DNA of 64,000 nucleotides, from assembly GCF_032444005.1 (NCBI RefSeq), contig NC_091285.1, positions 39,618,001-39,682,000 of the forward strand. Reading direction: 5' to 3'. The notes below the pieces were generated by a model. The model made no database searches. It had not been told where the DNA came from and worked only from the letters and a program-made list of their open reading frames with translations. The position numbers were made by a program, and so were the translations under genes. Source of the stretch: Ranitomeya imitator. Lineage: Eukaryota. Below are positions 668 to 62,101 of this stretch, piece after piece. How positions within the stretch are numbered: the first letter of the stretch is position 1; each line of letters begins with the position of its first letter.

Positions 668-2290
668 CAGTACAGACCAAAAGTTTGGACACCTTCTCAT
701 TTAAAGATTTTTCTGTATTTTCATGACTATGAAGATTGTACATTCACACTGAAGGCATCAAAACTATGAATTAACACATGTGGAATTATATACTTAACAA
801 AAAAGTGTGAAACAACTGAAAATATGTCTTATATTCTAGGTTCTTCACAGTAGCCACCTTTTCCTTTGATGACTGCTTTGCACACTCTTGGCATTCTCTT
901 GATGAGCTTCAAGAGGCAGTCACCGGGAATGGTTTTCACTTCACAGGTGTGCCCTGTCAGGTTTAATAAGTGGGATTTCTTGCCTTATAAATGGGGTTGG
1001 GACCATCAGTTGTGTTGTGCAGAAGTCTGGTGGATACACAGCTGATAGTCCTACTGAATACACTGTTAAAATTTGTATTATGGCAAGAAAAAAGCAGCTA
1101 AGTAAAGAAAAACGAGTGGCCATCATTACTTTAAGAAATGAAGGTCAGTCAGTCCGAAAAATTGGGAAAACTTTGAAAGTGTCCCCAAGTGCAGTGGCAA
1201 AATCCATCAAGCCTTACAAAGAAACTGGCTCACATGAGGACCGCCCCAGGAAAGGAAGACCAAGAGTCACCTCTGCTTCTGAGGATAAGTTTATCCGAGT
1301 CACCAGCCTCAGAAATCGCAGGATAACAGCAGCTCATATTAGAAACCAGGTCAATGCCACACAGAGTTCTAGCAGCAGACACATCTCTAGAAGAACTGTT
1401 AAGAGGAGACTTTGTGCAGCAGGCCTTCATGGTAAAATAGCTGCTAGGAAACCACTGCTAAGGACAGGCAACAAGCAGAAGAGACTTGTTTGGGCTAAAG
1501 AACACAAGGAATGGACAATAGTCCAGTGGAAATCTGTGCTTTGGTCTGATGAGTCCAAATTTGAGATCTTTGGTTCCAACCACCGTGTCTTTGTGCGACG
1601 CAGAAAAGGTGAACAGATGGACTCTACATGCCTGGTTCCCACCGTGAAGCATGGAGGAGGAGGTGTGATGGTGTGGGGGTGCTTTGCTGGTGACACTGTT
1701 GGGGATTTATTCAAAACTGAAGGCATACTGAACCAGCATGGCTACCACAGCATCTTGCAGCGGCATGCTATTCCATCCGGTTTGCGTTTAGTTGGACCAT
1801 CATTTATTTTTCAACAGGACAATGACCCCAAACACACCTCCAGGCTGTGTAAGGGCTATTTGACCAAGAAGGAGAGTGATGGGGTGCTGCGCCAGATGAC
1901 CTGGCCTCCACAGTCACCAGACCTGAACCCAATCGAGATGGTTTGGGGTGAGCTGGACCGCAGAGTGAAGGCAAAAGGGCCAACAAGTGCTAAGCCTCTC
2001 TGGGAACTCCTTCAAGATTGTTGGAAGACCATTCCCGGTGACTACCTCTTGAAGCTCATCAAGAGAATGCCAAGAGTGTGCAAAGCAGTCATCAAAGCAA
2101 AAGGTGGCTATAGAACCTAGAATATAAGACATATTTTCAGTTGTTTCACACTTTTTTGTTAAGTATATAATTCCACATTTGTTAATTCATAGTTTTGATG
2201 CCTTCAGTGTGAATGTACAATTTTCATAGTCATGAAAATACAGAAAAATCTTTAAATGAGAAGGTGTGTCCAAACTTTTGGTCTGCACTG
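668..2290 (+). mobile_element. Tc1-like DNA transposon, DD38E (Intruder-type), near full length, in an NDST1 intron
   Basis: Starts TA|CAGTACAGACCAAAAGTTTGGACAC and ends GTCCAAACTTTTGGTCTGCACTG. Inverted repeats of about 270 bp (668-937 / 2024-2290) flank a transposase ORF. The right flank reads AA instead of TA. Confidence 0.95.
1080..2120 (+). CDS. Tc1-family transposase with DD38E triad (346 aa from ATG 1080)
   Basis: MARKKQLSKEKR..., GRPR motif, [24 protein letters not shown] count 38 residues between the second D and the E. A 5-bp loss near the end changes YFEEPRI* (seen in the sister copies) to YRT*. Confidence 0.9.
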   Translation: MARKKQLSKEKRVAIITLRNEGQSVRKIGKTLKVSPSAVAKSIKPYKETGSHEDRPRKGRPRVTSASEDKFIRVTSLRNRRITAAHIRNQVNATQSSSSRHISRRTVKRRLCAAGLHGKIAARKPLLRTGNKQKRLVWAKEHKEWTIVQWKSVLWSDESKFEIFGSNHRVFVRRRKGEQMDSTCLVPTVKHGGGGVMVWGCFAGDTVGDLFKTEGILNQHGYHSILQRHAIPSGLRLVGPSFIFQQDNDPKHTSRLCKGYLTKKESDGVLRQMTWPPQSPDLNPIEMVWGELDRRVKAKGPTSAKPLWELLQDCWKTIPGDYLLKLIKRMPRVCKAVIKAKGGYRT

Positions 2291-5913: not shown

Positions 5914-7565
5914 CAGTTAGGGCCAGAAATATTTGGACAGTAACACAATTTTCGCGAGTTGGGTTCTGCATGCCACCACATTGGATTTGAAATGAAACCT
6001 CTACAACTGAATTCAAGTGCAGATTGTAACGTTTAATTTGAAGGGTTGAACAAAAATATCTGATAGAAAATGTAGGAATTGTACACATTTCTTTACAAAC
6101 ACTCCACATTTTAGGAGGTCAAAAGTAATTGGACAAATAAACATAACCCAAACAAAATATTTTTAATTTCAATATTTTGTTGCAAATCCTTTGGAGGCAA
6201 TCACTGCCTTAAGTCTGGAACCCATGGACATCACCAAACACTGGGTTTCCTCCTTCTTAATGCTTTGCCAGGCCTTTACAGCCGCAGCCTTCAGGTCTTG
6301 CTTGTTTGTGGGTCTTTCCGTCTTAAGTCTGGATTTGAGCAAGTGAAATGCATGCTCAATTGGGTTTAGATCTGGAGATTGACTTGGCCATTGCAGAATG
6401 TTCCACTTTTTGGCACTCATGAACTCCTGGGTAGCTTTGGCTGTATGCTTGGGGTCATTGTCCATCTGTACTATGAAGCGCCGTCCAATCAACTTTGCAG
6501 CATTTGGCTGAATCTGGGCTGAAAGTATATCCCGGTACACTTCAGAATTCATCCGGCTACTCTTGTCTGCTCTTATGTCATCAATAAACACAAGTGACCC
6601 AGTGCCATTGAAAGCCATGCATGCCCATGCCATCACGTTGCCTCCACCATGTTTTACAGAGGATGTGGTGTGCCTTGGATCATGTGCCGTTCCCTTTCTT
6701 CTCCAAACTTTTTTCTTCCCATCATTCTGGTACAGGTTGATCTTTGTCTCATCTGTCCATAGAATACTTTTCCAGAACTGAGCTGGCTTCTTGAGGTGTT
6801 TTTCTGCAAATTTAACTCTGGCCTGTCTATTTTTGGTATTGATGAATGGTTTGCATCTAGATGTGAACCCTTTGTATTTACTGTCATGGAGTCTTCTCTT
6901 TACTGTTGACTTAGAGACAGATACACCTACTTCACTGAGAGTGTTCTGGACTTCAGTTGATGTTGTGAACGGGTTCTTCTTCACCAAATTAAGTATGCGG
7001 CGATCATCCACCACTGTTGTCATCCGTGGACGCCCAGGCCTTTTTGAGTTCCCAAGCTCACCAGTCAATTCCTTTTTTCTCAGAATGTACCCAACTGTTG
7101 ATTTAGCTACTCCAAGCATGTCTGCTATCTCTCTGATGGATTTTTTCTTTTTTTTCAGCCTCAGGATGTTCTGCTTCACCTCAATTGAGAGTTCCTTTGA
7201 CCGCATGTTGTCTGCTCACAGCAACAGCTTCCAAATGCAAAACCACACACCTGGAATCCACCCCTGACCTTTTAACTACTTCATTGATTACAGGTTAACG
7301 AGGGAGACGCCTTCAGAGTTAATTGCAGCCCTTAGAGTCCATTGTCCAATTACTTTTGGTCCCTTGAAAAAGAGGACGCTATGCATTACAGAGATATGAT
7401 TCCTAAACCCTTTCTCCGATTTGGATGTGGAAACTATCATATTGCAGCTGGGAGTGTGCACTTTCAGCCCATATTACATATATAATTTTATTTCTGAACA
7501 TGTTTTTGTAAACAGCTAAAATAACAAAACTTGTGTCACTGTCCAAATATTTCTGGCCCTAACTG
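5914..7565 (-). mobile_element. Intact Tc1 DD34E transposon
   Basis: Perfect 28-bp TIR CAGTTAGGGCCAGAAATATTTGGACAGT at both ends, TA on both flanks, inner inverted repeat AAAAGTAATTGGACAA (~6121 and ~7345), uninterrupted ORF. Confidence 0.95.
6169..7206 (-). CDS. Tc1 transposase, DD34E, 345 aa, apparently intact
   Basis: MRSKELS... paired-like [29 protein letters not shown] (34-residue spacing), ends KGFATKY*. Confidence 0.93.
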   Translation of the reverse strand: MRSKELSIEVKQNILRLKKKKKSIREIADMLGVAKSTVGYILRKKELTGELGNSKRPGRPRMTTVVDDRRILNLVKKNPFTTSTEVQNTLSEVGVSVSKSTVKRRLHDSKYKGFTSRCKPFINTKNRQARVKFAEKHLKKPAQFWKSILWTDETKINLYQNDGKKKVWRRKGTAHDPRHTTSSVKHGGGNVMAWACMAFNGTGSLVFIDDIRADKSSRMNSEVYRDILSAQIQPNAAKLIGRRFIVQMDNDPKHTAKATQEFMSAKKWNILQWPSQSPDLNPIEHAFHLLKSRLKTERPTNKQDLKAAAVKAWQSIKKEETQCLVMSMGSRLKAVIASKGFATKY

Positions 7566-10530: not shown

Positions 10531-10910
10531 AGAGGCCGTCCACTACTCGGACAACCCCTTCTCAATCGCTATATTTCCGCTTGTAAAATAAAAACCTCCT
10601 GTACTCAACATTCCGGGTGTCCCAGGGATTGCATGACACTGTCACGTGATCCCTGCATCCAATCAGCGGCTGTTCACTCTCACTTCCTTGGGACATAAAT
10701 GACATCTTGAGGAAATCAGAACAGCAGCAACTCTAACTTCTTCCAAGTGTTAATTTTGTCCGAAGAAACTGAACAGTGGCTAATTGGTTGGAGAGCTCAC
10801 TTGACATAAAAATGTCACACAAGCCTCGAGAGACACAGTATCGGCGCCTGATATATGTAGGGGGAGGATTTACTTTCCAGGAGAGAATATTTTGTAGTGG
10901 ACAACCTTTT
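10531..10910. mobile_element. T2/Kolobok-type MITE
   Basis: TTAA|AGAGGCCGTCCACTAC ... GTAGTGGACAACCTTTT|TTAA. Confidence 0.6.
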
Positions 10911-11302
10911 TTAAGATTCCCCTTCACTGCAACTAAGGGGCCTATGTCAAACCCTGAAAAACAATATACGTTAATACCATTATCCCTCCTCCAACAAACT
11001 TTACAGCTGACACAATGTAGTCAGGCGGGTGATGTTCTGGAATTCACCAAAAACAGACTCCAGATAGAGAAGTGTGAACCGTCACTAGACGGCACATTTC
11101 CGCCATTATCCAGTGGTGGCGGAAACTGTGAAACTTTACATTTTTGTTCAGTGTACATAGGAGTAAATAATATGAGTGTATCTGTAACCACCACTGGAGA
11201 AAAAAACATTTTTCATGAGCTGAACTCAAAGTTCTGAGACTTTTATCTCAGGACAAAAGTCCTTTTTCTGTCAAATATGGTCACAAATTTGTGTAAATTT
11301 GT

Positions 11303-11870
11303 TGTCAAGACTCCGTGACTGATATACCGGTCAGTGCAGGGGTCCTGATTCAGGTCGGGCACGACGAGACTGCGCAGAGCCCGGAGGGAGCTGACCGCCG
11401 GCCAGCAGGACCTGCGGCATGTGACTTGCCAAAGGCGGACCCGGGGCAGGGCCAGCCACAACACTCCAGGAGGGAGTCGCTGAGCGTGACGGGGACCTGC
11501 TGGAAGGCAAGGTGGTAAGGGGCGCCAATGAGCGCTAAACAGGAGGGACGTCAAAGTCAGGCCAAGAGTCAAAACCGTACAAGGGGTATAGATGGGAGAT
11601 TAGTCAGGGACGTAGCTGAAGTCGGAAACCAGGAACACACACAGTACCAAACCAGAAGACGAGAGCAACGGTAAACGGACCGGGTCAACAGCAGGGAATC
11701 GGACAAGGCAGGCACCGACAGGGGGTCAACTAACTCAGCCGAGGGCAGAAGTATAACTGACAAGGAATGGAGCCGGACAGCAGTCATATAAACCCCTCCC
11801 AGAGCCAAGGAGAGGCTCCAAGTATTAACCCCTGGAGCACCGGCCCGCAGATTCGGAACAGAACATGACA
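11303..11870 (-). mobile_element. Solo LTR (probably Gypsy-type)
   Basis: TGTCA...TGACA termini, 5-bp flanks TTTGT/TCTGT (one mismatch), TATA-like TTTATAT on the minus strand. It splits the Tc1 TIR. Confidence 0.75.
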
Positions 11871-12485
11871 TCTGTGTTAGTGAGCACTTCTTTGCCGAGA
11901 TAATCCATCCACCTCACAGATGTGACATATCCAGATGATGATTAGACAGCATGGTTATTGAACAGGTGAGCCACTCTAAAATGTAGTTTTACAGTATTTG
12001 GGGACCCAGAAGGGGGGAAGAAACCCAATCAGTATCTGGTATGACCACCATTTGCCTCATGCAGTGCAACACATCTCCTTCGCATAGAGTTGATCACGTT
12101 GCTGATCGTAGCCTGTGGATGTTGGTCCACTCCTCTTCAATGGCTGTACGAAGATCTTGTATGACCAGCATACTCACCAAACTTGTCACCCATTGATCAT
12201 GTTTGGAATGCTCTGGATCGGTATATACGACAGCATGTTCAAGTTCCTGCCAAGTATCCGGCAACTTCGCACATCCATTGAAGGGAAGTGGACCAACATT
12301 TAACAGGCCACAAACACCAACCTAAGCTATGCGAAAGAGATGTTTTGCACTGCATGAGGCAAATGGTGGTCACACCAGATACTGACTGGTTTTCCGCCCC
12401 TAAAGGACCCACAATCCTGTAAAATCCTGTTGTAGGGTGGCCTTTTATTGTAGCCATCATGCTGTCTAATCATCATCTGGATGTG

Positions 12486-15400
12486 AAGAGCTCACTAACA
12501 CAGATTAGAGGAAGAGCTCACTAACACTGATTAGAAGAAGCGCTCACTAACACAGATTAGGAGAAGAGCTCACTAACAGATTAGAAGAAGAGCTCATTAA
12601 CACACGGATCTGCGCATTCCTACACCGCGACACCACAAAAATACTAGTGCATGCCCTTATCTCCAACCTTGACTACTGCAACCTCCTACTCTCTGGCCTC
12701 CACTCTGGCACTAATTCATCCTATACTCTGCTGCCCGACTAATCTACCTGTCTCCCCCCAGCCTCTCCCCTATGGCAAGCCCTTCACTGGCTTCCTATCA
12801 CCCAAAGACTCTAGTTCAGAACCCTTACAATGACATACACAGCCATCCACAACCTGTCTCCTCCATACATCTGTGACATGGTTTCCCGGTACTTACCTAC
12901 ACGCAACCTCCGATCCTCTCAAGACCTCCTTCTCTATTCCCCTCTCATCTCTTCTTCCCACAACCGCATCCAAGACTTCTCCCGTGTTTTCCCCATACTC
13001 TGGAACTCTACCACAACACATCTGACTCTTGCCTACCATAGAAACCTTTAAAAAGAACCTGAAGACTCACCTCTTCCGACAAGCCTACAACCTGCAGTGA
13101 TCCTCAACCTACTGAACCGCCGCACAACCAGCTCTACCCTCTCCTAGTAAATCTTCACCCATCCCCTGCAAACTGTGAGCCCTCGCGGGCAGGGTCCTTC
13201 CTCTTTATGTACGTGTGTGCCTTGTTTTTTGCTCATGTTTAGTACTATTTGTCTATATTTGCCCCCTTTTCACATGTAAAGCGCCATGGAATAAATGGCG
13301 CTATAAAAATATACAATAATAATAATTAGAAGAGCTCACTAACCCAGATTAGAAGAAGGGCTCACTAACATAGATTAGGAGAAGAGCTCACTAACCCAGA
13401 TTAGAAGAAGAGCTTACTAACACAGATTAGAAGAAGAGCTCACAAACCCAGATTAGAAGAAGAGCTCACTAACACATTAGAAGAAGAGCTCACTAACACA
13501 GATTAGGAGAAGAGCTCACTAACACAGATTAGAAGAAGAGCTCACTAACACAGATTAGAAGAAGAGCTCACTAACACGTTAGGAGAAGAGCTCACTAACA
13601 CAGATTAGGAGAAGAGCTCACTAACACAGATTAGAAGAGCTCAATAACACAGATTAGAAGAAGAGCTCACAAACCCAGATTAGAAGAAGAGCTCACTAAC
13701 ACATTAGGAGAAGAGCTCACTAACACAGATTAGGAGAAGAACTCACTAACAGATTAGAAGAGCTCGCTAACACATTAGGAGAAGAGCTCACTAACACAGA
13801 TTAGGAGAAGAGCTCACTAACACATTAGGAGAAGAGCTCACTAACACAGATTAGGAGAACTCACTAACAGATTAGGAGAAGAGCTCACTAACACAGATTA
13901 GGAGAAGAGCTCACTAACACAGATTAGGAGAAGAGCTCACTAACACATTAGGAGAAGAGCTCACTAACACAGATTAGGAGAAGAGCTCACTAACACAGAT
14001 TAGGAGACGAGCTCACTAACACATTAGGAGAAGAGCTCACTAAAACATTAGAAGAGCTCACAGATTAGAAGAGCTCACTAACACGTTAGGAGAAGAGCTC
14101 ACTAACACAGATTAGGAGAAGATCTCACTAACACAGATTAGAAGAGCTCAATAACACAGATTAGAAGAGCTCACTAACACAGATTAGAAGAAGAGCTCAC
14201 AAACCCAGATTAGAAGAAGAGCTCACTAACACAGATTAGGAGAAGAGCTCACTAACAGATTAGAAGAAGAGCTCGCTAACACATTAGGAGAAGAGCTCAC
14301 TAACACAGATTAGGAGAAGAGCTCACTAACACAGATTAGGAGAAGAGCTCACTAACACATTAGGAGAAGAGCTCACTAACACAGATTAAGAGAAGAGCTC
14401 ACTAACAGATTAGAAGAAGAGCTCGCTAACACATTAGGAGAAGAGCTCACTAACAAAGATTAGGAGAAGAGCTCACTAACACAGATTAGGAGAAGAGCTC
14501 ACTAACACATTAGGAGAAGAGCTCACTAACACAGATTAGGAGAAGAGCTCACTAACACAGATTAGGAGAAGAGCTCACTAAAACATTAGGAGAAGAGCTC
14601 ACTAACACATTAGGAGAAGAGCTCACTAACACAGATTAGGAGAAGAGCTCACTAACACAGATTAGGAGAAGAGCTCACTAACACAGATTAGAAGAAGAGC
14701 TCGCTAACAGATTAGAAGAGCTCACTAACACAGATTAGAAGAGCTCACTAACACAGATTAGAAGAGCTCACTAACACAGATTAGGAGAAGAGCTCACTAA
14801 CACAGATTAGGAGAAGAGCTCACTAACACAGATTAGAAGAAGAGCTCGCTAACAGATTAGAAGAGCTCACTAACACAGATTAGAAGAGCTCACTAACACA
14901 GATTAGAAGAGCTCACTAACACAGATTAGGAGAAGATCTCACTAACACAGATTAGAAGAGCTCAATAACACAGATTAGAAGAGCTCACTAACACAGATTA
15001 GAAGAAGAGCTCACAAACCCAGATTAGAAGAAGAGCTCACTAACACAGATTAGGAGAAGAGCTCACTAACAGATTAGAAGAAGAGCTCGCTAACACATTA
15101 GGAGAAGAGCTCACTAACACAGATTAGGAGAAGAGCTCACTAACACAGATTAGGAGAAGAGCTCACTAACACATTAGGAGAAGAGCTCACTAACACAGAT
15201 TAAGAGAAGAGCTCACTAACAGATTAGAAGAAGAGCTCGCTAACACATTAGGAGAAGAGCTCACTAACACAGATTAGGAGAAGAGCTCACTAACACAGAT
15301 TAGGAGAAGAGCTCACTAACACATTAAGAGAAGAGCTCACTAACACAGATTAGGAGAAGAGCTCACTAACACAGATTAGGAGAAGAGCTCACTAAAACAT

Positions 15401-15560
15401 TAGGAGAAGAGCTCACTAACACATTAGGAGAAGAGCTCACTAACACAGATTAGGAGAAGAGCTCACTAACACAGATTAGGAGAAGAGCTCACTAACACAG
15501 ATTAGAAGAAGAGCTCGCTAACAGATTAGAAGAGCTCACTAACACAGATTAGAAGAGAAT
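12486..15560 (+). repeat. Minisatellite, ~23-26 bp unit AGAAGAGCTCACTAACACAGATTAG(G)
   Basis: Direct tandem array with a SacI site (GAGCTC) in most units, interrupted by L2 at ~12603-13326. Confidence 0.97.
12603..13326 (+). mobile_element. 5'-truncated L2 LINE fragment
   Basis: Eroded RT C-terminus (…LVHAL…LDYCN.LL.GL…), 3' UTR ending TGTAAAGCGCCATGGAATAAATGGCGCTAT plus (AAT)n. Confidence 0.85.
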
Positions 15561-17229
15561 TAGAAAAAAATCTCTGATTTCAGCATATGAAAAATGGGAG
15601 CAAAAAACAAAAGTGTTTCTTTTATATTTTTGTTCAGTATATTTGCAGATAACGTTGAGTTCGGTATTGGAAAAACAAATCTCAGACCACCAAAGAGATT
15701 TTTATTAAAAAATTAATCATCAGAGAACTTTGAACCTGTTTAGATTAGAAAAACATTAACCCCTTTCTGACATCGGACGTACTATCCCATCCATGTGGGG
15801 TGGGCCCCCATGACCATGGACGGGATAGTACGTCCAGCGCGATCGGCGGCGCTCACCGGGGGAGCGCCGCCGATCGCGGCCGGGTGTCAGCTGCCTATCG
15901 CAGCTGACATCCGGCACTATGTGCCAGGAGCGGTCACGGACCGCCCCCAGCACATTAACCCCCGGCACACCGCGATCAAAGATGATCGCGATGTGCCGGC
16001 GGTACAGGGAAGCTTCCCGCAGGGAGGGGGCTCCCTGCGGGCTTCCCTGAGCCCCCCGCAGCAACGCGATGTGATCACGTTGCTGCGAGGGTCTCACCTC
16101 CCTCCCTGCTCCCTCCAGCCCCGGATCCAAGATGGCCGCGGATCCGGGTCCTGCAGGGAGGGAGGTGGCTTCACAGAGCCTGCTCAGAGCAGGCACTGTG
16201 AAGGCTGCAGCGCTGCATGTCAGATCAGTGATCTGACAGAGTGCTGTGCAAACTGTCAGATCACTGATCTGTGATGTCCCCCCCTGGGACAAAGTAAAAA
16301 AGTTAAAAAAAAAATTTTCAAATGTGTAAAAAAAAATAAAAAAAAATATTCCAAAATAATGAAAAAAAAATAAAAATATTATTCCCATAAATACATTTCT
16401 TTATCTAAATAAAAAAAAAAAAACAATAAAAGTACAAATATTTAGTATCGCCGCGTCCGTAACGGCCCGACCTATAAAACTGGCCCACTAGTTAACCCCT
16501 TCAGTAAACACCGTAAGAAGAAAAAAAAAAAACGAGGCAAAAAACAACGCTTTATTATCATACCGCCGAACAAAAAGTGGAATAACACGCGATCAAAAAG
16601 ACAGATATAAATAACCATGGTACCGCTGAAAACGTCATCTTGTCCCGCAAAAAACGAGCCACCATACAGCATCATCAGCAAAAAATAAAAAAGTTATAGT
16701 CCTGAGAATAAAGCGATGCTAAAATAATTATTTTTTCTATAAAATAGTTTTTATCGTATAAAAGCGCCAAAACATAAAAAAATGATATAAATGAGGTGTC
16801 GCTGTAATCGTACTGACCCGAAGAATAAAACTGCTTTATCAATTTTACCAAACGCGGAACGGTATAAACACCTCCCCCAAAAGAAATTCATGAATAGCTG
16901 GTTTTTGGTCATTCTGCCTCACAAAAATTGGAATAAAAAGCGATCAAAAAATGTCACGTGCCCGAAAATGATACCAATAAAAACGTCAACTCGTCCCGCA
17001 AAAAACAAGACCTCACATGAGTCTGTGGACCAAAATATAGAAAAATTATAGCTCTCAAAATGTGTTAACGCAAAAAATATTTTTTGCAATAAAAAGCGTC
17101 TTTCAGTGTGTGACGGCTGCCAATCATAAAAATCCGCTAAAAAACCCGCTATAAAAGTAAATCAAACCCCCCTTCATCACCCCCTTAGTTAGGGAAAAAT
17201 TTAAAAAATGTATTTATTTCCATTTTCCC

Positions 17230-17575: not shown

Positions 17576-17589
17576 ATTATAATTGTGGG

Positions 17590-20320
17590 GTTTCCACTGT
17601 TTAGGCACATCAGGGGCTCTCCAAACGCGACATGGCGTCCGATCTCAATTCCAGCCAATTCTGCGTTGAAAAAGTAAAACAGTGCTTCTTCCCTTCCGAG
17701 CTCTCCCGTGTGCCCAAACAGGGGTTTACCCCAACATATGGGGTATCAGCGTACTCAGGACAAATAGGACAACAACTTTTGGGGTCCAATTTCTCCTGTT
17801 ACCCTTGGGAAAATACAAAACTCGGGGCTAAAACATATTTTTTGTGGGAAAAAAAAGGATTTTTTATTTTCACGGCTCTGCGTTATAAACTGTAGTGAAA
17901 CACTTGGGGGTTCAAAGTTCTCACAACACATCTAGATTAGTTCCCTGGGGGGTCTAGTTTCCAATATGGGGTCACTTGTGGGGGGTTTCTACTGTTTAGG
18001 TACATTAGGGGTTCTGCAAACGCAATGTGACGTCTGCAGACCATTCCATCTAAGTCTGCATTCCAAATGGCGCTCCTTCCCTTCCGAGCTCTGCCATGCG
18101 CTCAAACGGTGGTTTCCCCCAACATACGGGGTATCAGCGTACTCAGGACAAATTGGACAACAACTTTTGGGGTCGAATTTCTCCTCTTACCCTCGGGAAA
18201 ATACAAAACTGGGGGCTAAAAAATAATTTTGGGGGGAAAGATTTTTTTTTTTTAATTTTCACGGCTCTGCGTTACAAACTGTAGTGAAACACTTGGGGGT
18301 TCAAAGCTATCACAACACATCTAGATGAGTTCCTTAGGGGGTCTAGTTTCCAAAATGGTGTCACTTATGGGAGGTTTCTACTGTTTAGGTACATTAGGGG
18401 CTCTGCAAATGCAATGTGACACCTGCAGACCATTCCATCTAAGTCCTCATTCCAAATGGAGCTCCTTCCTTTCCGAGCCCTGCCATGCGCCCAAACAGTG
18501 GTTCCCCCCCACATATGGGGTATCAGCGCACTCAGGACAAATTGGACAACAAATTGTGGGGTAGAATTTCTCCTGTTACCCTCGGGAAAATACAAAACTG
18601 GGGGCTAAAAAAATAATTTTTGTGGGAAAAAAATTTTGTTTTATTTTTACGGCTCTGCATTATAAACTTCTGTGAAGCACTTGGTGGGTCAAAGTGCTCA
18701 CCACACCTCTAGATAAGTTCCTAAGGGGGTCTACTTTCCAAAATGGTGTCACTTGTGGGGGGTTTCTACTGTTTAGGTACATTAGGGGCTCTGAAAACGC
18801 AATGTGACACCTGCAGACCATTCCATCTAAGTCTGCATTCAAATGGCACTCCTTCCCTTCTGAGCCCTCCCATGTGCCCAAACAGTGGTTCCCCCCACAT
18901 ATGGTGTATCATCGCACTCAGGACAAATTGGGCAACAAATTTTGGGGTCCAATTTCTCCTGTTACCCTCAGGAAAATACAAAACTGGGGGCTAAAAAAAT
19001 AATTTTTGTGGGAAAAAAATTTTGTTTTATTTTTACGGCTCTGCATTATAAACTTCTGTGAAGCACTTGGTGGGTCAAAGTGCTCACCACACCTCTAGAT
19101 AAGTTCCTTAGGGGGTCTACTTTCCAAAATGGTGTCATTTGTGGGGGGTTTCAATGTTTAGGCACATCAGTGGCTCTTCAAACGCAACATGGCGTCCCAT
19201 CTCAATTCCTGTCAATTTTGCATTGAAAAGTCAAACGGCGCTCCTTCCCTTGCGAGCTCTCCCATCCGCCCAAACAGTGGTTTACCCCCACATATGGGGT
19301 ATCAGCGTACTCAGGACAAATTGTACAACAACTTTTTGGGTCCAATTTCTTCTCTTACCCTTGGGAAAATAAAAAATTGGGGGCAAAAAGATAATTTTTG
19401 TGAAAAAATATGATTTTTTATTTTTACGGTTCTACATTATAAACTTCTGTGAAGCACTTGGTGGGTCAAAGTGCTCACCACACCTCTAGATAAGTTCCTT
19501 ATGGGGTCTACTTTCCAAAATGGTGTCACTTGTGGGGGGTTTCAATGTTTAGGCACATCAGTGGCTCTTCAAACGCAACATGACGTCCCATCTCAATTCC
19601 TGTCAATTTTGCATTGAAAAGTCAAACGGCGCTCCTTCCCTTCCGAGCTCTCCCATCCACCCAAACAGTGGTTTACCCCCACATATGGGCTATCAGCGTA
19701 CTCAGGACAAATTGTACAACAACTTTTGGGGTCCAATTTCTTCTCTTACCCTTGGGAAAATAAAAAATTGGGGGCGAAAAGATAATTTTTGTGAAAAAAT
19801 ATGATTTTTTATTTTTACGGTTCTACATTATAAACTTCTGTGAAGCACTTGGTGGGTCAAAGTGCTCACCACACCTCTAGATAAGTTCCTTAGGGGGTCT
19901 ACTTTCCAAAATGGTGTCACTTGTGGGGGGTTTCAATGTTTAGCCACATCAGGGGCTCTCCAAACGAAACATGGCGTCCCATCTCAATTCCAGTCAATTT
20001 TGCATTGAAAAGTCAAATGGCACTCCTTCGCTTCCGAGCTCTGCCATGCGCCCAAACAGTGGTTTACCCCCACATGTGGGGTATTGGCATACTCAGGACA
20101 AAATGTACAACAATGTTTGGGGTCCATTTTCTCCTGTTACCCTTGGTAAAATAAAACAAATTGGAGCTGAATTAAATTTTTTGTGAAAAAAAGTTAAATG
20201 TTCATTTTTATTTAAACATTCAAAAAATTCCTGTGAAGCACCAGAAGGGTTAATAAACTTCTTGAATATGGTTTTGAGCACCTTGAGGGGTGTAGTTTTT
20301 AGAATGGTGTCACACTTGGG
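17590..20320 (+). repeat. ~390-bp tandem array, 7 units
   Basis: Unit starts near 17591, 17986, 18375, 18763, 19149, 19540 and 19931. Confidence 0.92.
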
Positions 20321-23580: not shown

Positions 23581-23586
<6 letters not shown>

Positions 23587-23725
23587 ATTATAGCGCCATT
23601 TATTCCATGGCGCTTTACATATGAGGAGGGGTATATATAATAAAAACAGGTACAATAATCTTATACAAGTCCCGACTGGTACATGAGGAGAGAGGACCCT
23701 GCCCGCGAATGCTCACAATCTACAA
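23581..23725 (-). mobile_element. L2 3' tail fragment next to (TA)n
   Basis: Reverse complement of the L2 tail at 13170-13320 (ATAGCGCCATTTATTCCATGGCGCTTTACA). Confidence 0.75.
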
Positions 23726-23730
23726 ATATA

Positions 23731-25315
<1,585 letters not shown>

Positions 25316-34150: not shown

Positions 34151-35738
34151 TAAATCCGATCATTTTACTGGAACTGACGCTGCGTTTTTTGCGCAGTGAA
34201 AATACTCCGGGTCAAAAACTCAGTGGGAACTTAACCTTAGCGGATTTGAACCTCCCATTGCTTATATCGCAGTATTGCTGTGTTTAGTGTACATTTTTCA
34301 TGCAGGCTGTGTAACACAGCTGGCGTCTGCCTGATGTGAAGCAGGATCGGCTGCTGAGCCTGCTCCATCCACAAGGATTCAACAGGTTATGTTTTCTCTG
34401 AAACACCATAACAAAAACATAAAGATCTGGCTGGGGACCATAGCAGGAAACCAGATTAGCCGCTCTCTGCCCTTGGCCGGCTATTCCCAGCGCTGCTAAA
34501 GGTGATTGACAAGTTTTTTTTCCATGGGAGAAATCTTAGTCACCTGCAACAGCGATGGGAAGAGTCGTCGATGGTCGACCACGACTAGTCTGGTCTCCGG
34601 ATGTGGTCACTCTCCAGATCTCCTACCCCTGAGCATCTTATGGAAAGATATACCCTGCTGCACTCATGCAGCCCAGCTCAGATTCATGATGCCTGTGCTT
34701 TAGGCTGCATGAATCGGCTGACAGGTGCCCTCTCTATCATCTCTATCTCTATCATCTCTATCATAATAATAAGGTGTCCTGCAGTAACTGTGTTCTGTCA
34801 GAAGGTGGCGCAATGTGAGCGACATATAGTAAAATGCGTATACAGGCGTATTACGTCCTCGCATAGGTCTGGCCAGTTTCCAGTCTGCATAGCTAAGCAG
34901 GATAAAATCCTATTTGATTCAATGTATTGTGTAACTCGAGGGAGACTGGATGCAACTGTAACAAACCCTCAGCTGTGAGAAGTGCAAGGATCCCATACAT
35001 TTAGTATCCTGACTTCTTTTTATAAGTGATTCATGATGGATCCAGACAATGATTGTTCCTGTTGATGATAAAAGACCTCATGAAGCCCAGACAGGTCTGT
35101 GCAGGTTTTCAGCTCCCAGTGTAAACACAAACCGTTCCATTCACTGACCGCAAGCCGAGATCTCGACAATGGCGAGAAATGTATTTACAGTAGATTGGAA
35201 TGTTGCAATACCCGGAAAATCCCTTATTTCCTGGAATTGTTGCACCTGATGATTATGTGGTCAGTCAAGGGGAGGAGGACATTCCAGTGAAAATTCACCC
35301 CACCCCCTCACACCGAACTTCTACACCTCCTCCGAAGGATGGCTTAAAGGGGTGTTCCAAAATCCAAAGGAATTTTCATTCTAAATCCCTGTCTATTTAG
35401 TGTCATAATCAAAACCGTTATCTAACATACAGTACTTGTATTAACCATTTCTGTCCTTCCCGCACTACACTGTCTTAACTGCTTTTTTCCTTTTTCAAGA
35501 CATTTTGAGAATCCCAGTGCATGCTGGGATATGCAAATGAAGCTCATCAAGGGACAGAGGCAGTGGTCACTGCTGCAGCCTCTGCCCCCCCCCCCCCCCC
35601 TTAAATTTATTTTACTCGCTTATATAGCTCCATTAATTCCACAGCGCTTTACAGGTGTTTTTGGCACTGTCCCCGTTGGGGCTCACAATCTAGATTTCCT
35701 ATCATGTAGGTCTTATGGAGTGAGGCAGGAAACTAGAG

Positions 35739-39775: not shown

Positions 39776-41013
39776 CAGGGTGGAGCGCGGTAATTTGCTG
39801 ATTTGGGAATGAAATAAAAAAATTATGATCATTAGAAAAATTTATTTTATATTTTAATTATACTGAACAGTAATGGAATTTTTAAATTACATGGTTTTAA
39901 ATAGTGTATCTGGCAAATGTCGACCTTCGCTATCCACACACTGCTGCATACGTTTTCTGAAGTTTTCATGAACTCTAACAAGCATGTCCACTGGTATTCT
40001 GCCAATTTCAGCTTCAATATTGTTCCTTAGGTCTTCCAAGGTGTTGGGACGGTTGATATACACCTTAGACTTCAGGTAACCCCAAAGGAAAAAATCGCAT
40101 GGGGCTAAATCTGGTGAGCGTGCTGGCCAGTTCACATCTCCCCTCAAAGAGATAAGCCGTCCAGGAAACATTTGCCTCAAACAATTCATGGTAACCCTCG
40201 CTGTGTGTGCAGTGGCACCATCCTGTTGGAACCATGTATCCTCTAGTTCCATTGCCTCAAGAGCCGGCTGAAAATAATCCTGTATCATAGACAAGTACCA
40301 TTCGGAGTTCACAGTTATGGCACGACCATTATCCTGAAAAAAGTAAGGACCAATGATGCCTACTCGTGATATGGCGCACCACACAGTGAAAATGAGGTGA
40401 AAATGTGCCTCATCAGAAAAAAACACAATTGCGTCACGGGGTATCGTTGCTAACATGTCTTCACAAGAGGTCCGCCGTGTCAAATAGTCCCATGCTGACA
40501 AATGTTGGACCACGCACATTTTATACGGGTGAAAATTCAGTTCATCATGAAGAATCCGGTGGAGAGAACGTCTTGAAATGCCAAGAGCAAATGATTGCTT
40601 CCGAGCAGAGCGTTTCGGAGATTGCAGTACTGCTGCTCTAACTCTCTCGATGTTTTGTGGTGTTGTAATCCTTCTCTCAGGTCCCCTTCGTACACATGAC
40701 ACATTCCCTGCTGTTCTGAATGCATTCACCCAATTTACAATTGATTGCCGTCCAGGAACAAATCCGCGTGGAGGAACAGCGAATTGTAAACGAAAAGCAC
40801 GCTGCACTGCAATGATCGAGTGGGCATTTGAAAAATACGCTTCAACACAAAATGACCTCTCCTCACGTGTCCACTGCATGATGGCAACTGAAAGGCAGAG
40901 GAATACAAATCTCCCATCAGCCACTGTAAGCCACACCCACTCTCCCCTCTCTTCGACCGACAGTGCCGCTACAGCATGCAGTGCAAAAAAGCAAATTACC
41001 GCGCTCCACCCTG
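39776..41013 (-). mobile_element. DD41D (Visitor/rosa-type) mariner-like transposon
   Basis: Perfect 23-bp TIR CAGGGTGGAGCGCGGTAATTTGC with TA on both flanks. Confidence 0.92.
39887..40879 (-). CDS. DD41D transposase, open frame with a probable in-frame internal deletion
   Basis: MQWTREERSFCVEAYF…FSDEAHF…FQQDGATAH…WPARSPDLAPCDFFLWG, with 41 residues between the second and third D. SDEAHFHL runs straight into IFTVWCAIS, lacking the usual NKQN…ENP…PLH segment. Confidence 0.8.
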   Translation of the reverse strand: MQWTREERSFCVEAYFSNAHSIIAVQRAFRLQFAVPPRGFVPGRQSIVNWVNAFRTAGNVSCVRRGPERRITTPQNIERVRAAVLQSPKRSARKQSFALGISRRSLHRILHDELNFHPYKMCVVQHLSAWDYLTRRTSCEDMLATIPRDAIVFFSDEAHFHLIFTVWCAISRVGIIGPYFFQDNGRAITVNSEWYLSMIQDYFQPALEAMELEDTWFQQDGATAHTARVTMNCLRQMFPGRLISLRGDVNWPARSPDLAPCDFFLWGYLKSKVYINRPNTLEDLRNNIEAEIGRIPVDMLVRVHENFRKRMQQCVDSEGRHLPDTLFKTM

Positions 41014-41015
41014 TA

Positions 41016-44000
41016 CTAGATGGTTGCCCGATTCTAACGCATCGGGTATTCTAGAATATGTATGTCCACGTAGTATATTGCCCAGCCACGTAGTATATTG
41101 CCCAGCCACATAGTATATTGCCCTGTCACGTAGTATATTGCCCAGCCACGTAGTATATTGCCCAGTCACGTACTATATTTCCAGCCACTTAGTATATTGC
41201 CCAGTCACGTAGTATATTGCACAGCCACATACTATATTTCCAGCCACATACTATATTGCCCAGCCACGTAGTATATTGCCCAGCCACGTAGTATATTGCC
41301 CAGTCACGTAGTATATTGCCCAGCCACGTAGTATATTGCCCAGTCACGTACTATATTTCCAGCCACGTAGTATATTGCCCAGTCACGTAGTATATTGCAC
41401 AGCCACGTACTATATTTCCAGCCACATACTATATTGCCCAGCCACGTAGTATATTGCCCAGCCACGTAGTATATTGCCCAGTCACGTAGTATATTGCCCA
41501 GCCACGTAGTATATTGCCCAGTCACGTACTATATTGCCCAGCCACGTAGTATATTGCCCAGCCACGTAGTATATTGCCCAGTCACGTACTATATTGCCCA
41601 GCCACGTAGTATATTGCCCAGTCACGTAGTATATTGCCCAGCCACGTAGTATATTGCCCAGTCACGTACTATATTTCCAGCCACGTAGTATATTGCCCAG
41701 CCACGTAGTATATTGCCCAGTCACGTACTATATTGCCCAGCCACGTAGTATATTGCCCAGTCACGTAGTATATTGCCCAGCCACGTAGTATATTGCCCAG
41801 TCACGTACTATATTGCCCAGCCACGTAGTATATTGCCCAGTCACATACTATATTGCCCAGCCACGTAGTATATTGCCCAGTCACGTAGTATATTGCCCAG
41901 CCACGTAGTATATTGCCCAGTCACGTAGTATATTGCCCAGTCACGTAGTATATTGCACAGCCACGTACTATATTTCCAGCCACGTAGTATATTGCCCAGC
42001 CACGTAGTATATTGCCCAGTCACGTACTATATTTCCAGCCACGTAGTATATTGCCCAGCCACGTAGTATATTGCCCAGTCACGTACTATATTGCCCAGCC
42101 ACGTAGTATATTGCCCAGTCACGTAGTATATTGCCCAGCCACGTAGTATATTGCCCAGTCACGTACTATATTGCCCAGCCACGTAGTATATTGCCCAGTC
42201 ACGTAGTATATTGCCCAGCCACGTAGTATATTGCCCAGTCACGTACTATATTTCCAGCCACGTAGTATATTGCCCAGTCACGTAGTATATTCCCCAGTCA
42301 CGTAGTATATTGCACAGCCACGTACTATATTTCCAGCCACGTAGTATATTGCCCAGCCACGTAGTATATTGCCCAGTCACGTACTATATTTCCAGCCACG
42401 TAGTATATTGCCCAGCCACGTAGTATATTGCCCAGTCACGTACTATATTGCCCAGCCACGTAGTATATTGCCCAGTCACGTAGTATATTGCCCAGCCACG
42501 TAGTATATTGCCCAGTCACGTAGTATATTGCCCAGTCACGTAGTATATTGCCCAGTCACGTAGTATATTGCACAGCCACGTACTATATTTCCAGCCACGT
42601 AGTATATTGCCCAGCCACGTAGTATATTGCCCAGTCACGTACTATATTTCCAGCCACGTAGTATATTGCCCAGCCACGTAGTATATTGCCCAGTCACGTA
42701 CTATATTGCCCAGCCACGTAGTATATTGCCCAGTCACGTAGTATATTGCCCAGCCACGTAGTATATTGCCCAGTCACGTACTATATTGCCCAGCCACGTA
42801 GTATATTGCCCAGTCACGTAGTATATTGCCCAGCCACGTAGTATATTGCCCAGTCACGTACTATATTTCCAGCCACGTAGTATATTGCCCAGTCACGTAG
42901 TATATTCCCCAGTCACGTAGTATATTGCACAGCCACGTACTATATTTCCAGCCACGTAGTATATTGCCCAGCCACGTAGTATATTGCCCAGTCACGTTCT
43001 ATATTTCCAGCCACGTAGTATATTGCCCAGCCACGTAGTATATTGCCCAGTCACGTACTATATTGCCCAGCCACATAGTATATTGCCCAGTCACGTAGTA
43101 TATTGCCCAGCCACGTAGTATATTGCCCAGTCACGTACTATATTGCCCAGCCACGTAGTATATTGCCCAGTCACGTAGTATATAGCCCAGTCACGTAGTA
43201 TATTGCCCAGTCACGTAGTATATTGCCCAGCCACGTAGTATATTGCCCAGTCACGTACTATATTTCCAGCCACGTAGTATATTGCCCAGCCACGTACTAT
43301 ATTGCCCAGCCACATAGTATATTGCCCAGTCACGTAGTATATTGCCTAGTCTCATAGTATATTGCCCAGCCACGTAGTATATTGCCCAGTCACGTACTAT
43401 ATTGCCCAGCCACGTAGTATATTGCCCAGCCACGTACTATATTGCCCAGTCACGTAGTATATTGCCCAGCCACATAGTATATTGCCCAGTCACGTAGTAT
43501 ATTGCCCAGCCACGTACTATATTTCCCAGCCACATAGTATATTGCCCAGTCACGTAGTATATTGCCCAGTCACGTAGTATATTGCCCAGCCACATAGTAT
43601 ATTGCCCAGCCACATAGTATATTGCCCAGTCACGTAGTATATTGCCCAGCCACGTACTATATTGCCCAGCCACGTAGTATATTGCCCAGCCACGTACTAT
43701 ATTGCCCAGCCACGTAGTATATTGCCCAGTGACGTAGTATATTGCTCAGCCACGTAGTAGATTGCTCAGCCACGTAGTATATTGCCCAGTTACGTAGTAT
43801 ATTGTCCAGTCACGTAGTATATTGCCCACAGCACAGAGCCACGTAGCATATTGCACAGCCCATGTAGTATATTGCCCAGCTATGTAGTATATTGTCCAGC
43901 CACGTATGACACAGGTTAAAAAAATAAAAAATAAACACATACTCACCCTCCGCAGGCGCGTTGTAGCACTGTCCACGGATTATTGCTGGCGGCGGCCATC

Positions 44001-44664: not shown

Positions 44665-44910
44665 TTCTAGGTTCTTCAAAGTAGCCACCTTTTGCTTTGA
44701 TTACTGCTTTGCACACTCTTGGCATTCTCTTGATGAGCTTCAAGAGGTAGTCACCGGGAATGGTTTTCACTTCACAGGTGTGTCCTGTCAGGTTTAATAA
44801 GTGAGATTTCTTGCCTTATAAATGGGGTTGGGACCATCAGTTGTGTTGAGCAGAAGTCTGGTGGATACACAGCTAATAGTCCTACTGAATAGACTGTGAG
44901 AATTTGTATT

Positions 44911-45953
44911 ATGGCAAGAAAAAAGCAGCTAAACGAGTGGCCATCATTACTTTAAGAAATGAGGGTCAGTCAGTCCGAAAAATTGGGAAAACTTTGAAAC
45001 TGTCCCCAAGTGCAGTGGCAAAAACCATCAAGCGCAACAAAGAAACTGGCTCACATGAGGACCGCCCCAGGAAAGGAAGACCAAGAGTCACCTCTGCTTC
45101 TGAGGATAAGTTTATCCGAGTCACCAGCCTCAGAAATCGCAGGTTAACAGCAGCTCAGATTAGAGACCAGGTCAATGCCACACAGAGTTCCAGCAGCAGA
45201 CACATCTCTACAACAACTGTTAAGAGGAGACTTTGTGCAGCAGGCCTTCATGGTAAAATAGCTGCTAGGAAACCACTGCTAAGGACAGGCAACAAGCAGA
45301 AGAGACTTGTTTGGGCTAAAGAACACAAGGAATGGACATTAGACCAGTGGAAATCTGTGCTTTGGTCTGATGAGTCCAAATTTGAGATCTTTGGTTCCAA
45401 CCACCGTGTCTTTGTGCGACGCAGAAAAGGTGAACGGATGGACTCTACATGCCTGGTTCCCACCGTGAAGCATGGAGGAGGAGGTGTGATGATGTGGGGG
45501 TGTTTTGCTGGTGACACTGTTGGGGATTTATTCAAAATTGAAGGCATACTGAACCAGCATGGCTACCACGGCATCTTGCAGCGGCATGCTATTCCATCCG
45601 GTTTGCGTTTAGTTGGACCATCATTTATTTTTCAACAGGACAACGACCCCAAACACACCTCCAGGCTGTGTAAGGGCTATTTGACCAAGAAGGAGAGAGA
45701 TGGGGTGCTACCCCAGATGACCTGGCCTCCACAGTCACCAGACGTGAACCCAATCGAGATGGTTTGGGGTGAGCTGGACCGCAGAATGAAGGCAAAAGGG
45801 CCAACAAGTACTAAGCATCTCTGGGAACTCCTTCAAGATTGTTGGAAGACCATTCCCGGTGACTACCTCTTGAAGCTCATCAAGAGAATGCCAAGGGTGT
45901 GAAAAGCAGTAATCAAAGTAAAAGGTGGCTACTTTGAAAAACCTAGAATATAA
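44911..45953 (+). pseudogene. DD38E transposase pseudogene
   Basis: Relative to copy 1 there is a 10-bp deletion after CAGCTAA (frameshift near codon 7) and TGC>TGA at 45900-45902. The catalytic core is otherwise intact. Confidence 0.9.
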
Positions 45954-48919: not shown

Positions 48920-49430
48920 GAAACCCTAATCCAAACACACCCCTAACCCTAATCCCAACAGTAACCCTAACCACACCTCTAACCCAGACACACCCCTAAC
49001 CCTAATCCCAACCCTATTCCCAACCGTAAATGTAATCTAAACCCTAACTGTAACTTTAGCCCCAACCCAAACTGTAGCCCTAGCCCTAACCCTAGCCCTA
49101 ACCCTAGCCCTAACCCTAGCCCTAATCCCAAACCTATTCCCAACTGTAAATGTAATCTAAACCCTAACTGTAACTTTAGCCCCAACCCAAACTGTAGCCC
49201 TAGCCCTAACCCTAACCCTAATCCTAACCCTAGCCCTAACCTTAGCCCTAACCCTAGCCCTAAACCTAATCCCAACCCTAGCCCTAACCCTAGCCCTAAC
49301 CCTAATCCTAACCCTAGCTCTAACCCTAGCCCTAACCCTAGCCCTAACCCTAGCCCTAACCCTAGCCCTAACCCTAACCCTAGCCCTAACCCTAGCCCTA
49401 ACCCTAGCCCTAACCCTAGCCCTAGCCCTA
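48920..49430 (-). repeat. Interstitial telomere-like tract (CCCTAA/CCCTAG alternating)
   Basis: Long runs of CCCTAGCCCTAA plus degenerate CCCTAA units. Confidence 0.92.
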
Positions 49431-55492: not shown

Positions 55493-55749
55493 CCCTATAA
55501 CAATAAGTGCCCACTTTACATTTAATAAATTCCCGAGTCTCCCCCTGTACAGCTCCCCTATACACAGCATGATGCTCTCTTATACACAGTATACTGACTC
55601 CTTAGTAGCCCCCAAACTGTTTGATGGCTCCAACAATATATAATGACCCCCACACTGTAATCTCCATACTGTATGATGGCCCCCTAGATAGCCTCCATAT
55701 ACAGTAGCATAATGCACCAAATAGTCCACAATATAGTATAATGCACTCC

Positions 55750-61845: not shown

Positions 61846-62101
61846 TATTATTTATTATGCTTATTTATATAGCGCCATCATATTCCGCAGCGCTTTACAG
61901 ACATTATCTCTGTCCCCATTGGGGCTCACAATCAACATTCCCCATCAGTATGTCTGGAGTGTGAGAGGAAACCGGAGAACCCGGAGGAAACCCACGCAAA
62001 CACGGGGAGAACATACAAACTCCTTGCAGATGTTGTCCTTGGTGGGATTTGAACCCAGGACCCCGGTATTGCAAAAGAACAATGCTAACCACTGAGCCGC
62101 C
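61846..62101 (-). mobile_element. V-SINE-like copy in CD74 intron 1
   Basis: Same head, central domain and tail as 8325-8609. Confidence 0.85.

What the first reader, a model, noticed from the sequence alone, without database searches (positions are those of the whole stretch)
11871..15639. A 3-kb minisatellite born from a ~25-bp piece of a Tc1 terminal repeat, with the ancestral monomer preserved in the opposite TIR
Seen: the left arm has a single copy of TCTGTGTTAGTGAGCACTTCT (11871-11891), whose reverse complement AGAAGTGCTCACTAACACAGA differs at one base from the array unit AGAAGAGCTCACTAACACAGA. The array starts where the right arm reaches that region (12486), and TIR sequence resumes after it (~15575-15639). 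Inference: in situ amplification inside one TIR only, giving a before-and-after record of satellite birth.
Basis: seen in the sequence. Interest (0 to 1): 0.7.

Follow-up and report, generated by a model that had tools for sequence, protein, structure and literature searches.

The report
Minisatellite grown from a Tc1 end
A dead, rearranged Tc1 "jumping gene" in a poison-frog genome has had a 27-letter piece of one of its long end-repeats copied about 95 times head-to-tail; it is a clean but ordinary example of the known way transposon ends seed tandem repeats.

Summary
A 26-bp unit (AGAAGAGCTCACTAACACAGATTAGG) is repeated about 95 times at 12485-12604 and 13328-15556. One copy with a single mismatch sits on the opposite strand at 11871-11891. 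Tc1 terminal sequence resumes at 15557-15638.

Three corrections apply:
- The "3-kb array" is 2.35 kb of repeats split by a 723-bp retroposon fragment (12605-13327).
- Both arms are 3'-type Tc1 ends, each abutting a transposase C-terminal remnant. The structure is a head-to-head or foldback derivative, not a canonical element with its two TIRs.
- The array replaced about 50 bp outboard and about 40 bp inboard of its source. The left arm is itself broken by a 567-bp insertion and lacks its tip.

Three unrelated public contigs, and other copies seen in frog read sets, carry the source segment once. The derivation from the Tc1 end is therefore solid.

Array-type contigs occur in runs labelled as four different organisms, so the array is old. 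Two 652-bp blocks differing at 2 bases show it is still growing. Whether it was born at this locus, or occurs at other loci, could not be tested.

The scan has already noted many other Tc1-born minisatellites in this genome, on other DNA. This is a known kind of event and its interest is low to moderate.

The parts
11207..11302 (.). Left arm, outer part of the Tc1 long end-repeat; the terminal ~46 bp are missing
   Evidence: Pairs with 15572-15596 (I10). Aligns to canonical L010 from CATTTTTCATGAGCTGAAC onward. Family contigs diverge before 11207 into the canonical outer sequence (table 7).
11303..11869 (.). 567-bp insertion of another repeat family into the left arm, with an apparent 6-bp target duplication ATTTGT/ATCTGT
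   Evidence: Family copies join 11298-11302 directly to the motif (tables 5 and 5c). Contigs of all four runs start at 11302/11303, and one ends at 11870 (table 8). Flanks printed.
11870..11892 (-). Single-copy source segment in the left arm (reverse complement AAGAAGTGCTCACTAACACAGAT)
   Evidence: One mismatch to the array core; 95-96% complementary to array units; aligned to canonical copies in A1.
11893..12013 (.). Left arm, inner part of the end-repeat
   Evidence: 82.5% identical to L010 over the whole left arm; inverted repeat with 12458-12485 (I3).
12014..12155 (-). Tc1 transposase C-terminal remnant on the reverse strand (...SMRRRCVALHEANGGHTRY*)
   Evidence: Translation; aligns to the L010 3' coding end; inverted repeats I1 and I2.
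12160..12395 (+). Tc1 transposase C-terminal remnant on the forward strand, frameshifted (PAYSPNLSPIDHVWNALDR...HEANGGHTRY*)
   Evidence: Translation; Pfam DDE_3 E=1.9e-4 at profile positions 113-139 of 146; aligns to L010.
12396..12484 (.). Right arm, inner part of the end-repeat
12485..12604 (+). Array part 1: five old, divergent monomers
12605..13327 (+). 5'-truncated retroposon 3' fragment with an (AAT)n tail, inserted into the array
   Evidence: Sequence; its 3' end recurs at 23583-23717, 61847-61899 and 35620-35657; a very large number of contigs is laid on it. No Pfam match.
13328..15556 (+). Array part 2: 90 monomers with higher-order periods of 50 and 76 bp
14091..15556 (+). Youngest part of the array: blocks 14091-14742 and 14905-15556 differ at 2 of 652 bases; 14615-14759 and 14760-14904 are identical
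15557..15640 (.). Right arm, outer end-repeat with an intact terminus (...TTTATATTTTTGTTCAGTA) followed by TA
   Evidence: Aligns to the L010 terminus; sequence.

Best explanation
This is a decayed, non-coding Tc1-like remnant made of two 3' ends facing each other. In the right-hand end, a 27-bp stretch lying about 150 bp inside the long end-repeat was duplicated and then amplified to about 95 tandem copies.

Shown:
- The monomer is that stretch with one base lost and one changed.
- The array lies exactly at that stretch's position and has Tc1 end sequence on both sides.
- Canonical copies carry the stretch once.
- The inner monomers are divergent, and a retroposon fragment is inserted among them.
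- The outer 1.5 kb consists of multi-monomer blocks that are 99.7-100% identical.

Inferred:
- The first duplication arose by replication slippage or break repair with minimal microhomology (C|T at both edges).
- Growth was by unequal exchange or slippage of blocks of 1 to about 25 monomers, at this locus.
- The same turnover removed about 50 and about 40 bp of flanking end-repeat.
- The array has no function. It is a neutral by-product and probably a length-variable marker.
For: - Array anatomy.
- Homology of the monomer to a contiguous canonical segment: alignment A1, with canonical copies L010, L011 and L012.
- Family copies in frog runs with a single motif between 11298-11302 and 11890: table 5c.
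- Right arm with the array collapsed is 84.1% identical to L010 and its terminus is intact. Left arm is 82.5% identical.
- Block duplications with 2 differences in 652 bases and 0 in 145.
- Array-type contigs, with go-back joints typical of tandem repeats, occur in runs of several organism labels: tables 3 (place 12528), 5c and 7.
- The process is known from the literature: PMC9659126 (its table lists TIR-derived satDNAs), PMC4079207, PMC12628747.
Against: - No other locus of this genome could be searched, so 'grown at this locus' rests only on the absence of contrary evidence.
- X1 contigs carry monomer variants absent from the window. They may come from the other allele or from another locus.
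- Neither 'before' nor 'after' state is intact.
- The perfectly identical blocks could in part be assembly collapse or expansion; no read-level check of the array itself was possible.
Confidence: 0.75

Rival explanations
1. The array was not born here. A Tc1 derivative that already carried tandem copies of this segment in one end transposed or was duplicated, so the same array-bearing end exists at several loci. This would be a Tetris-like or miDNA4-like family.
For: - Array-type contigs occur in runs of four organism labels.
- X1 contigs carry monomer variants not present in the window.
- Palindromic and foldback derivatives of this end exist elsewhere (L012).
- The scan has noted many Tc1-born arrays in this genome.
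Against: - The joint between outer end-repeat and array was seen only in X3, in two contigs at about single-copy depth (table 5: 11244 to 12558).
- The bin holding the arm-to-array junction (12442-12508) has few contigs.
- No second copy lies in the 64-kb window.
- Depth cannot be read as copy number.
Confidence: 0.2
2. The two arms are not parts of one element. They are two independent, 5'-truncated Tc1 copies that came to lie head to head. On this reading the left copy is only a paralogous reference, not the 'opposite TIR'.
For: - Both arms are 3'-type ends.
- The arms are no closer to each other (82.6%) than each is to a copy from another source (82.5% and 84.1%).
- The left terminus is missing, so no shared target duplication can be shown.
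Against: - The two coding remnants abut without spacer at 12155/12160.
- Palindromic derivatives of this family exist (L012).
- One X3 contig 17% diverged from the window, and one X8 contig, run colinearly across the centre (table 8, records 22 and 30). This hints at further copies with the same centre.
Confidence: 0.3
3. Part of the array length is an assembly artefact: repeat blocks were mis-expanded.
For: The 145-bp blocks are identical and the 652-bp blocks are 99.7% identical.
Against: The blocks sit in a consistent monomer-variant pattern with unique variants on either side. Tandem contigs exist in independent runs.
Confidence: 0.1

Closest known systems
Tetris foldback transposon and its TIR-220 repeats (Drosophila virilis; PMC4079207)
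   Same: It is a non-autonomous, foldback-like DNA transposon whose terminal inverted repeats contain internal tandem repeats that expand to kb-size arrays.
   Different: The Tetris unit is about 220 bp, is present in both TIRs as a family feature, and also forms arrays outside the element. Here the unit is 26 bp, canonical copies carry it once, only one arm is expanded, and arrays outside the element were not tested.
miDNA4, a Tc1/mariner MITE with an internal satellite in Xenopus tropicalis (Scalvenzi and Pollet, as summarised in PMC12628747 and PMC9659126)
   Same: It is a frog Tc1/mariner-derived non-autonomous element whose internal repeat exists as one monomer or as arrays of variable copy number. 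Microhomology-mediated replication or repair is the proposed mechanism.
   Different: In miDNA4 the authors propose capture of a pre-existing tandem repeat by the MITE. Here the monomer is plainly the element's own end-repeat sequence, conserved in copies from unrelated sources.
Xstir satDNA from the Xmix MITE TIR in Xenopus laevis (Hikosaka and Kawahara, as summarised in PMC12628747 and PMC9659126)
   Same: It is a tandem array derived from the TIR or internal sequence of a frog DNA-transposon derivative, with composite forms of element plus array.
   Different: It belongs to a different transposon family and has a longer unit. The proposed stem-loop excision mechanism involves two neighbouring elements.
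Other Tc1-born minisatellites noted by this scan in the same genome (for example s1-294891, s1-280660, s1-312670)
   Same: Same genome and same superfamily; a short piece of a dead Tc1 is amplified to a kb-size array.
   Different: Those arrays derive from transposase coding segments. This one derives from the non-coding end-repeat. I did not re-test them.

Membership tests
Tc1-like DNA transposon (IS630/Tc1/mariner) | DDE transposase (Pfam DDE_3 / HTH_Tnp_Tc3_2) coding sequence | tested here: inconclusive
   Only C-terminal remnants remain. DDE_3 scores E=1.9e-4 at 21.8 bits, below the 28.6-bit cut-off, aligned to the end of the profile. The translation ends in the Tc1-typical ...HEANGGHTRY* (the 'typical' is from my own knowledge). 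The DNA aligns at 82-84% to L010, which retains more of the ORF.
Tc1-like DNA transposon (IS630/Tc1/mariner) | Terminal inverted repeats ending at a TA target duplication | tested here: inconclusive
   The right terminus is intact and followed by TA. The left arm lacks its terminal ~46 bp, so the pair of termini and the TA duplication cannot be shown. The arms are inverted repeats at 82.6% identity.
Tc1-like DNA transposon (IS630/Tc1/mariner) | Canonical layout: 5' end, ORF, 3' end | tested here: not met
   Both arms are 3'-type: the end-repeat abuts the transposase C-terminus in each. It is a rearranged derivative or two truncated copies.
Transposon-derived minisatellite / satDNA | Monomer homologous to a contiguous segment of the transposon | tested here: met
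   25 of 27 positions match the canonical TAAATCTGTGTTAGTGAGCACTTCTCC: one A is lost and one A is changed to T (A1).
Transposon-derived minisatellite / satDNA | Array located at the homologous position, flanked on both sides by transposon sequence | tested here: met
   the inner end-repeat lies up to 12484 and the outer end-repeat from 15557.
Transposon-derived minisatellite / satDNA | Ancestral state is a single copy in other members of the transposon family | tested here: met
   L010, L011 and L012; the left arm; frog family contigs (table 5c).
Satellite DNA in the strict sense (dispersed or long arrays independent of the transposon) | Arrays at several loci, or arrays lacking transposon flanks | not testable with these tools
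   No eukaryotic assembly is searchable here. The array dimer has 0 hits in the metagenome, viral and prokaryote collections. Contig depth is not a copy number.

The most novel reading that the evidence does not exclude
The 27-bp stretch of this Tc1 family's long end-repeat is a recurrent seeding hotspot. It would expand independently at many loci and in several frog lineages because of how foldback derivatives of the element are replicated or repaired, or because the stretch resembles the element's own terminus. In inverted orientation it matches the terminal sequence at 16 of 21 bases. On this reading, Tc1 ends would be a systematic source of the unusually many minisatellites in poison-frog genomes.
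Probability: 0.07. Interest if true: 0.5.

Novelty: new member of a known kind. Interest (0 to 1): 0.25.

Why it matters
This is a tidy, fully sequence-resolved case of a minisatellite whose founder segment can be named to the base. It shows a visible age gradient: old monomers with a retroposon insertion at the inner side, and near-identical blocks at the outer side. That makes it useful as an illustration and possibly as a length-variable marker with one SacI site per monomer.

It adds one non-coding (end-repeat) example to the many Tc1-born arrays of these very large, Tc1-rich frog genomes (PMC6278860, PMC11152451). It does not change what is known about how transposons seed tandem repeats (PMC9659126, PMC12628747).

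Tried and rejected
- **Viral-contig scan for the 17-mer motif.** Nine hits, all matching only the motif itself. I took them as chance matches.
- **Array dimer in other collections.** 0 hits in metagenome, viral and prokaryote genome collections. This is uninformative, because no frog assembly is in them.
- **Earlier-findings search by sequence and by relatives.** Word searches found no note on this 26-bp unit.
- **Copy number of the array from read laying depth.** The array bin sums to 13,000-52,000 against a unique depth of 5-18. I rejected this: overlapping short unitigs inflate the sum, the place-level figure is tenfold lower, and the tool itself says depth is no copy number.
- **Pfam on the retroposon fragment.** No match, so its class rests on its (AAT)n tail and its abundance.
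- **Array not sent to read laying.** The array-to-terminus junction and the array length were therefore not checked in reads.
- **My first reading, from memory of salmonid Tc1 elements.** I took the motif region to be a 5'UTR joined aberrantly to an inverted coding end. L010 corrected this: the same junction is the normal 3' end of the family.
Full report
**What is there**

Tandem Repeats Finder reports a 26-bp period array at 12485-12604 (4.7 copies) and 13328-15556 (89 copies). The consensus is AGAAGAGCTCACTAACACAGATTAGG, with higher-order periods of 50 and 76 bp. The 21-base core occurs 89 times on the + strand with up to 3 mismatches. It occurs once on the - strand, at 11871-11891, with a single T-for-A difference. 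None is expected by chance.

The two array parts are separated by 12605-13327. This is a fragment of another repeat that ends in an (AAT)n tail, and its 3' end recurs three times elsewhere in the window. It is best read as a 5'-truncated retroposon inserted into the array; Pfam gives no match for it. The repeat proper is therefore 2.35 kb, or 95 monomers: 51 of 26 bp, 26 of 24 bp and 10 of 23 bp, with the remaining 8 of other lengths.

**The element around it**

The stretch 11926-12485 is a palindrome. BLAST aligns it to its own reverse complement at 70% over 586 columns. A global alignment of the two arms gives 82.6% over 298 aligned columns.

The centre holds Tc1 transposase C-terminal remnants in both orientations:
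- Forward at 12160-12395: PAYSPNLSPIDHVWNALDR ... HEANGGHTRY*, frameshifted. Pfam DDE_3 matches at E=1.9e-4 on the last part of the profile.
- Reverse at 12014-12155.

Outside the palindrome, 11207-11231 pairs with 15572-15596. Between 11303 and 11869 the left arm is interrupted by a 567-bp insertion.

**Canonical copies for comparison**

No second copy of this family lies in the window. I therefore fetched copies by exact search for the consensus of the motif region. The hits were two contigs in the metagenome collection (L010 = MDSQ01000216.1 and L011 = JACCDQ011790598.1) and one contig filed under a bacterial MAG that is plainly eukaryotic contamination (L012). Their source organisms are unknown.

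L010 shows the full end in this order: TA, the terminus CACTGAACAAAAATATAAA, about 290 bp of end-repeat, then the reverse complement of the transposase C-terminus. The end-repeat therefore abuts the 3' end of the ORF.
- The left arm, with its insertion removed, aligns to this at 82.5%.
- The right arm, with the array collapsed, aligns at 84.1% and has an intact terminus followed by TA.

Both arms of the window are thus 3'-type ends. The structure is either a foldback derivative or two truncated copies head to head. It is not a canonical element with its own 5' and 3' TIRs.

That the family has a true long TIR is only partly shown. L010 keeps the innermost 17 bp next to the ATG, and L012 is a palindromic derivative of the inner end-repeat.

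**Origin of the monomer**

All three canonical copies read ...GTC[T/A]AAATCTGTGTTAGTGAGCACTTCTCCTTTGCC... with the segment present once. The reverse complement of the array reads ...TCTCC|TAATCTGTGTTAGTGAGCTCTTCTCC|TAATC... (alignment A1). The monomer is therefore the contiguous canonical 27 bp TAAATCTGTGTTAGTGAGCACTTCTCC with one A lost and one A>T change. On the other strand that change creates the SacI site GAGCTC. Microhomology at the edges of the founder segment is minimal (C|T).

Contigs of four public runs laid on 10700-12700 add independent support. Family copies join 11298-11302 directly to 11887-11897 through a single motif, for example ...CTAAATCTGTGTAAGTGAGCACTTCTG... (tables 5 and 5c). 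This also proves that 11303-11869 is an insertion. Contigs of that inserted family start at 11302/11303, and one ends at 11870 (table 8). The flanks show an apparent 6-bp duplication, ATTTGT/ATCTGT.

Family contigs also diverge before 11207 into the canonical outer sequence (table 7). The left arm has therefore lost its terminal ~46 bp.

**Position and collateral damage**

The array sits exactly where the segment lies in the right arm, but it is not a simple expansion. Relative to L010 the right arm lacks about 50 bp on the outer side, between ...CAGAGATTTTTTTCT and the array. It also lacks about 40 bp on the inner side: TTTGCCGAGATAATCCATCC.ACC and GGTGTGGCATG.

**History inside the array**

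Coding each distinct monomer as a letter gives this string:

OPQER | insertion | ISITGUACCJADVGBAWFABDXAABAAYZaJ AKLCGAEFAABMEFbABAANBAACH DD AACHDD AKLCGAEFAABMEFAAcAANBAACH d

- The inner monomers, on both sides of the retroposon, are mostly singletons ending in ...TTAGA like the canonical sequence.
- The outer 1.5 kb is built of large blocks. 14091-14742 and 14905-15556 differ at 2 of 652 bases, with a perfect run of 365. 14615-14759 equals 14760-14904 exactly.
- Growth was therefore by unequal exchange or slippage of multi-monomer blocks, most recently at the outer side. The recent events are far younger than the element, whose arms differ by about 17%.

**Age and distribution**

The earlier notes of this scan identify the genome as a poison frog.
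- Run X1 (organism A) holds the locus at 98-100% identity: record 1 has 10 differences in 536 bases and record 8 has 0 in 246.
- Run X3 (organism B) holds the flank and left-arm junction at about 95%: record 17 has 26 differences in 538 bases. The element and its 567-bp insertion therefore predate the A/B split.
- At place 12528, 33-38 contigs in each of X1, X3, X8 and X14 carry the array consensus A instead of this monomer's T.
- Go-back joints typical of tandem repeats appear for X1, X3 and X8 (tables 3, 5c, 7).
- In X3, two contigs at about single-copy depth join outer end-repeat to array on the opposite strand (11244 to 12558). This is what the orthologous array-to-terminus junction would look like.

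The array thus exists in runs of at least three, probably four, organism labels.

X1 also has monomer variants absent from the window, such as ...AACTGCAGATTAGGA.... They may come from the other allele or from another locus. I do not use the summed depths as copy numbers; see Tried and rejected.

**Verdict**

The derivation of the minisatellite from the Tc1 end is secure, and the one-arm asymmetry at this locus is real.
- The 'opposite TIR of one element' is doubtful.
- The 'before-and-after' record is blurred by deletions and insertions.
- 'Birth in situ' is plausible but untested.

Tandem repeats born from transposon TIRs and from Tc1/mariner derivatives are well documented. Examples are Tetris TIR-220 (PMC4079207), and Xstir and miDNA4 in Xenopus (PMC9659126, PMC12628747). 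Poison-frog genomes are very rich in Tc1 (PMC6278860, PMC11152451). This 64-kb window alone holds at least six other kb-scale arrays and four long Tc1 transposase ORFs. The scan has already noted many Tc1-born minisatellites in this genome.

**Limits kept**

The N run at 17245 was not touched. Read laying was given 2,001 letters without the long array.

Noticed in passing
window 11303-11869: A 567-bp member of a separate repeat family is inserted in the left arm, right at the outer edge of the source segment. It has an apparent 6-bp target duplication (ATTTGT/ATCTGT). Contigs of the family occur in all four runs. Bin 11705-11771 is extremely abundant in X8 and X14.
   Followed up: partly
window 12605-13327: A 5'-truncated retroposon-like 3' fragment with an (AAT)n tail. 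Its translation contains ...ILVHALISNLDYCNLLLSGL.... It is by far the most heavily covered part of the laid stretch, and it has no Pfam match.
   Followed up: partly
window 10968-11157: A fragment of another Tc1 family (reverse transposase-like sequence, many contigs) is followed by an inverted Tc1 terminus, CTTTACATTTTTGTTCAGTGTA, at 11136-11157. This lies 50 bp upstream of the truncated left arm. It could be a separate element's end or a small inversion of the missing tip.
   Followed up: no
window 17587-20153 and 46733-48810: Two arrays of a ~390-bp unit lie in opposite orientation about 27 kb apart. A 717-bp stretch is 99% identical between them (17684-18400 versus 48810-48095). This suggests a large, young inverted duplication or an invertible segment.
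   Followed up: partly
window 41066-43906, 53567-55134, 55743-56299, 48922-49431: Further minisatellites are present: a 20-bp unit x142, a 52-bp unit x30, a 32-bp unit x17, and an interstitial telomere-like (CCCTAA)n block. The 20-bp array starts 130 bp from a mariner-like ORF (39890-40936, DUF4817 HTH).
   Followed up: no
window 1017-2117(+), 6172-7206(-), 24089-25006(+), 44904-45899(+): Four long open Tc1 transposase reading frames of 306-367 aa, with HTH_Tnp_Tc3_2 plus DDE_3. They belong to families unrelated at DNA level to the dead copy studied here.
   Followed up: partly
L012 (JBOFFX010000056.1): A contig filed under a Spirochaetia MAG carries a palindromic derivative of this vertebrate Tc1 end, plus (ATCT)n and other eukaryote-like repeats. 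It is probably host contamination in the bin.
   Followed up: no
L010 3590-3884 (canonical end-repeat): In inverted orientation the source segment (CACT-AACACAGATTTAGACA) matches the element's own terminus (CACTGAACAAAAATATAAACA) at 16 of 21 bases. A direct-orientation match of similar weak score lies at about 55 bp from the tip. This is possibly chance.
   Followed up: no
window 15760-16290: A GC-rich, strongly self-complementary element lies directly right of the Tc1 terminus, for example the 29-nt arms 16216-16244 / 16248-16276. ORFs are open on both strands, which is probably an artefact of composition.
   Followed up: no
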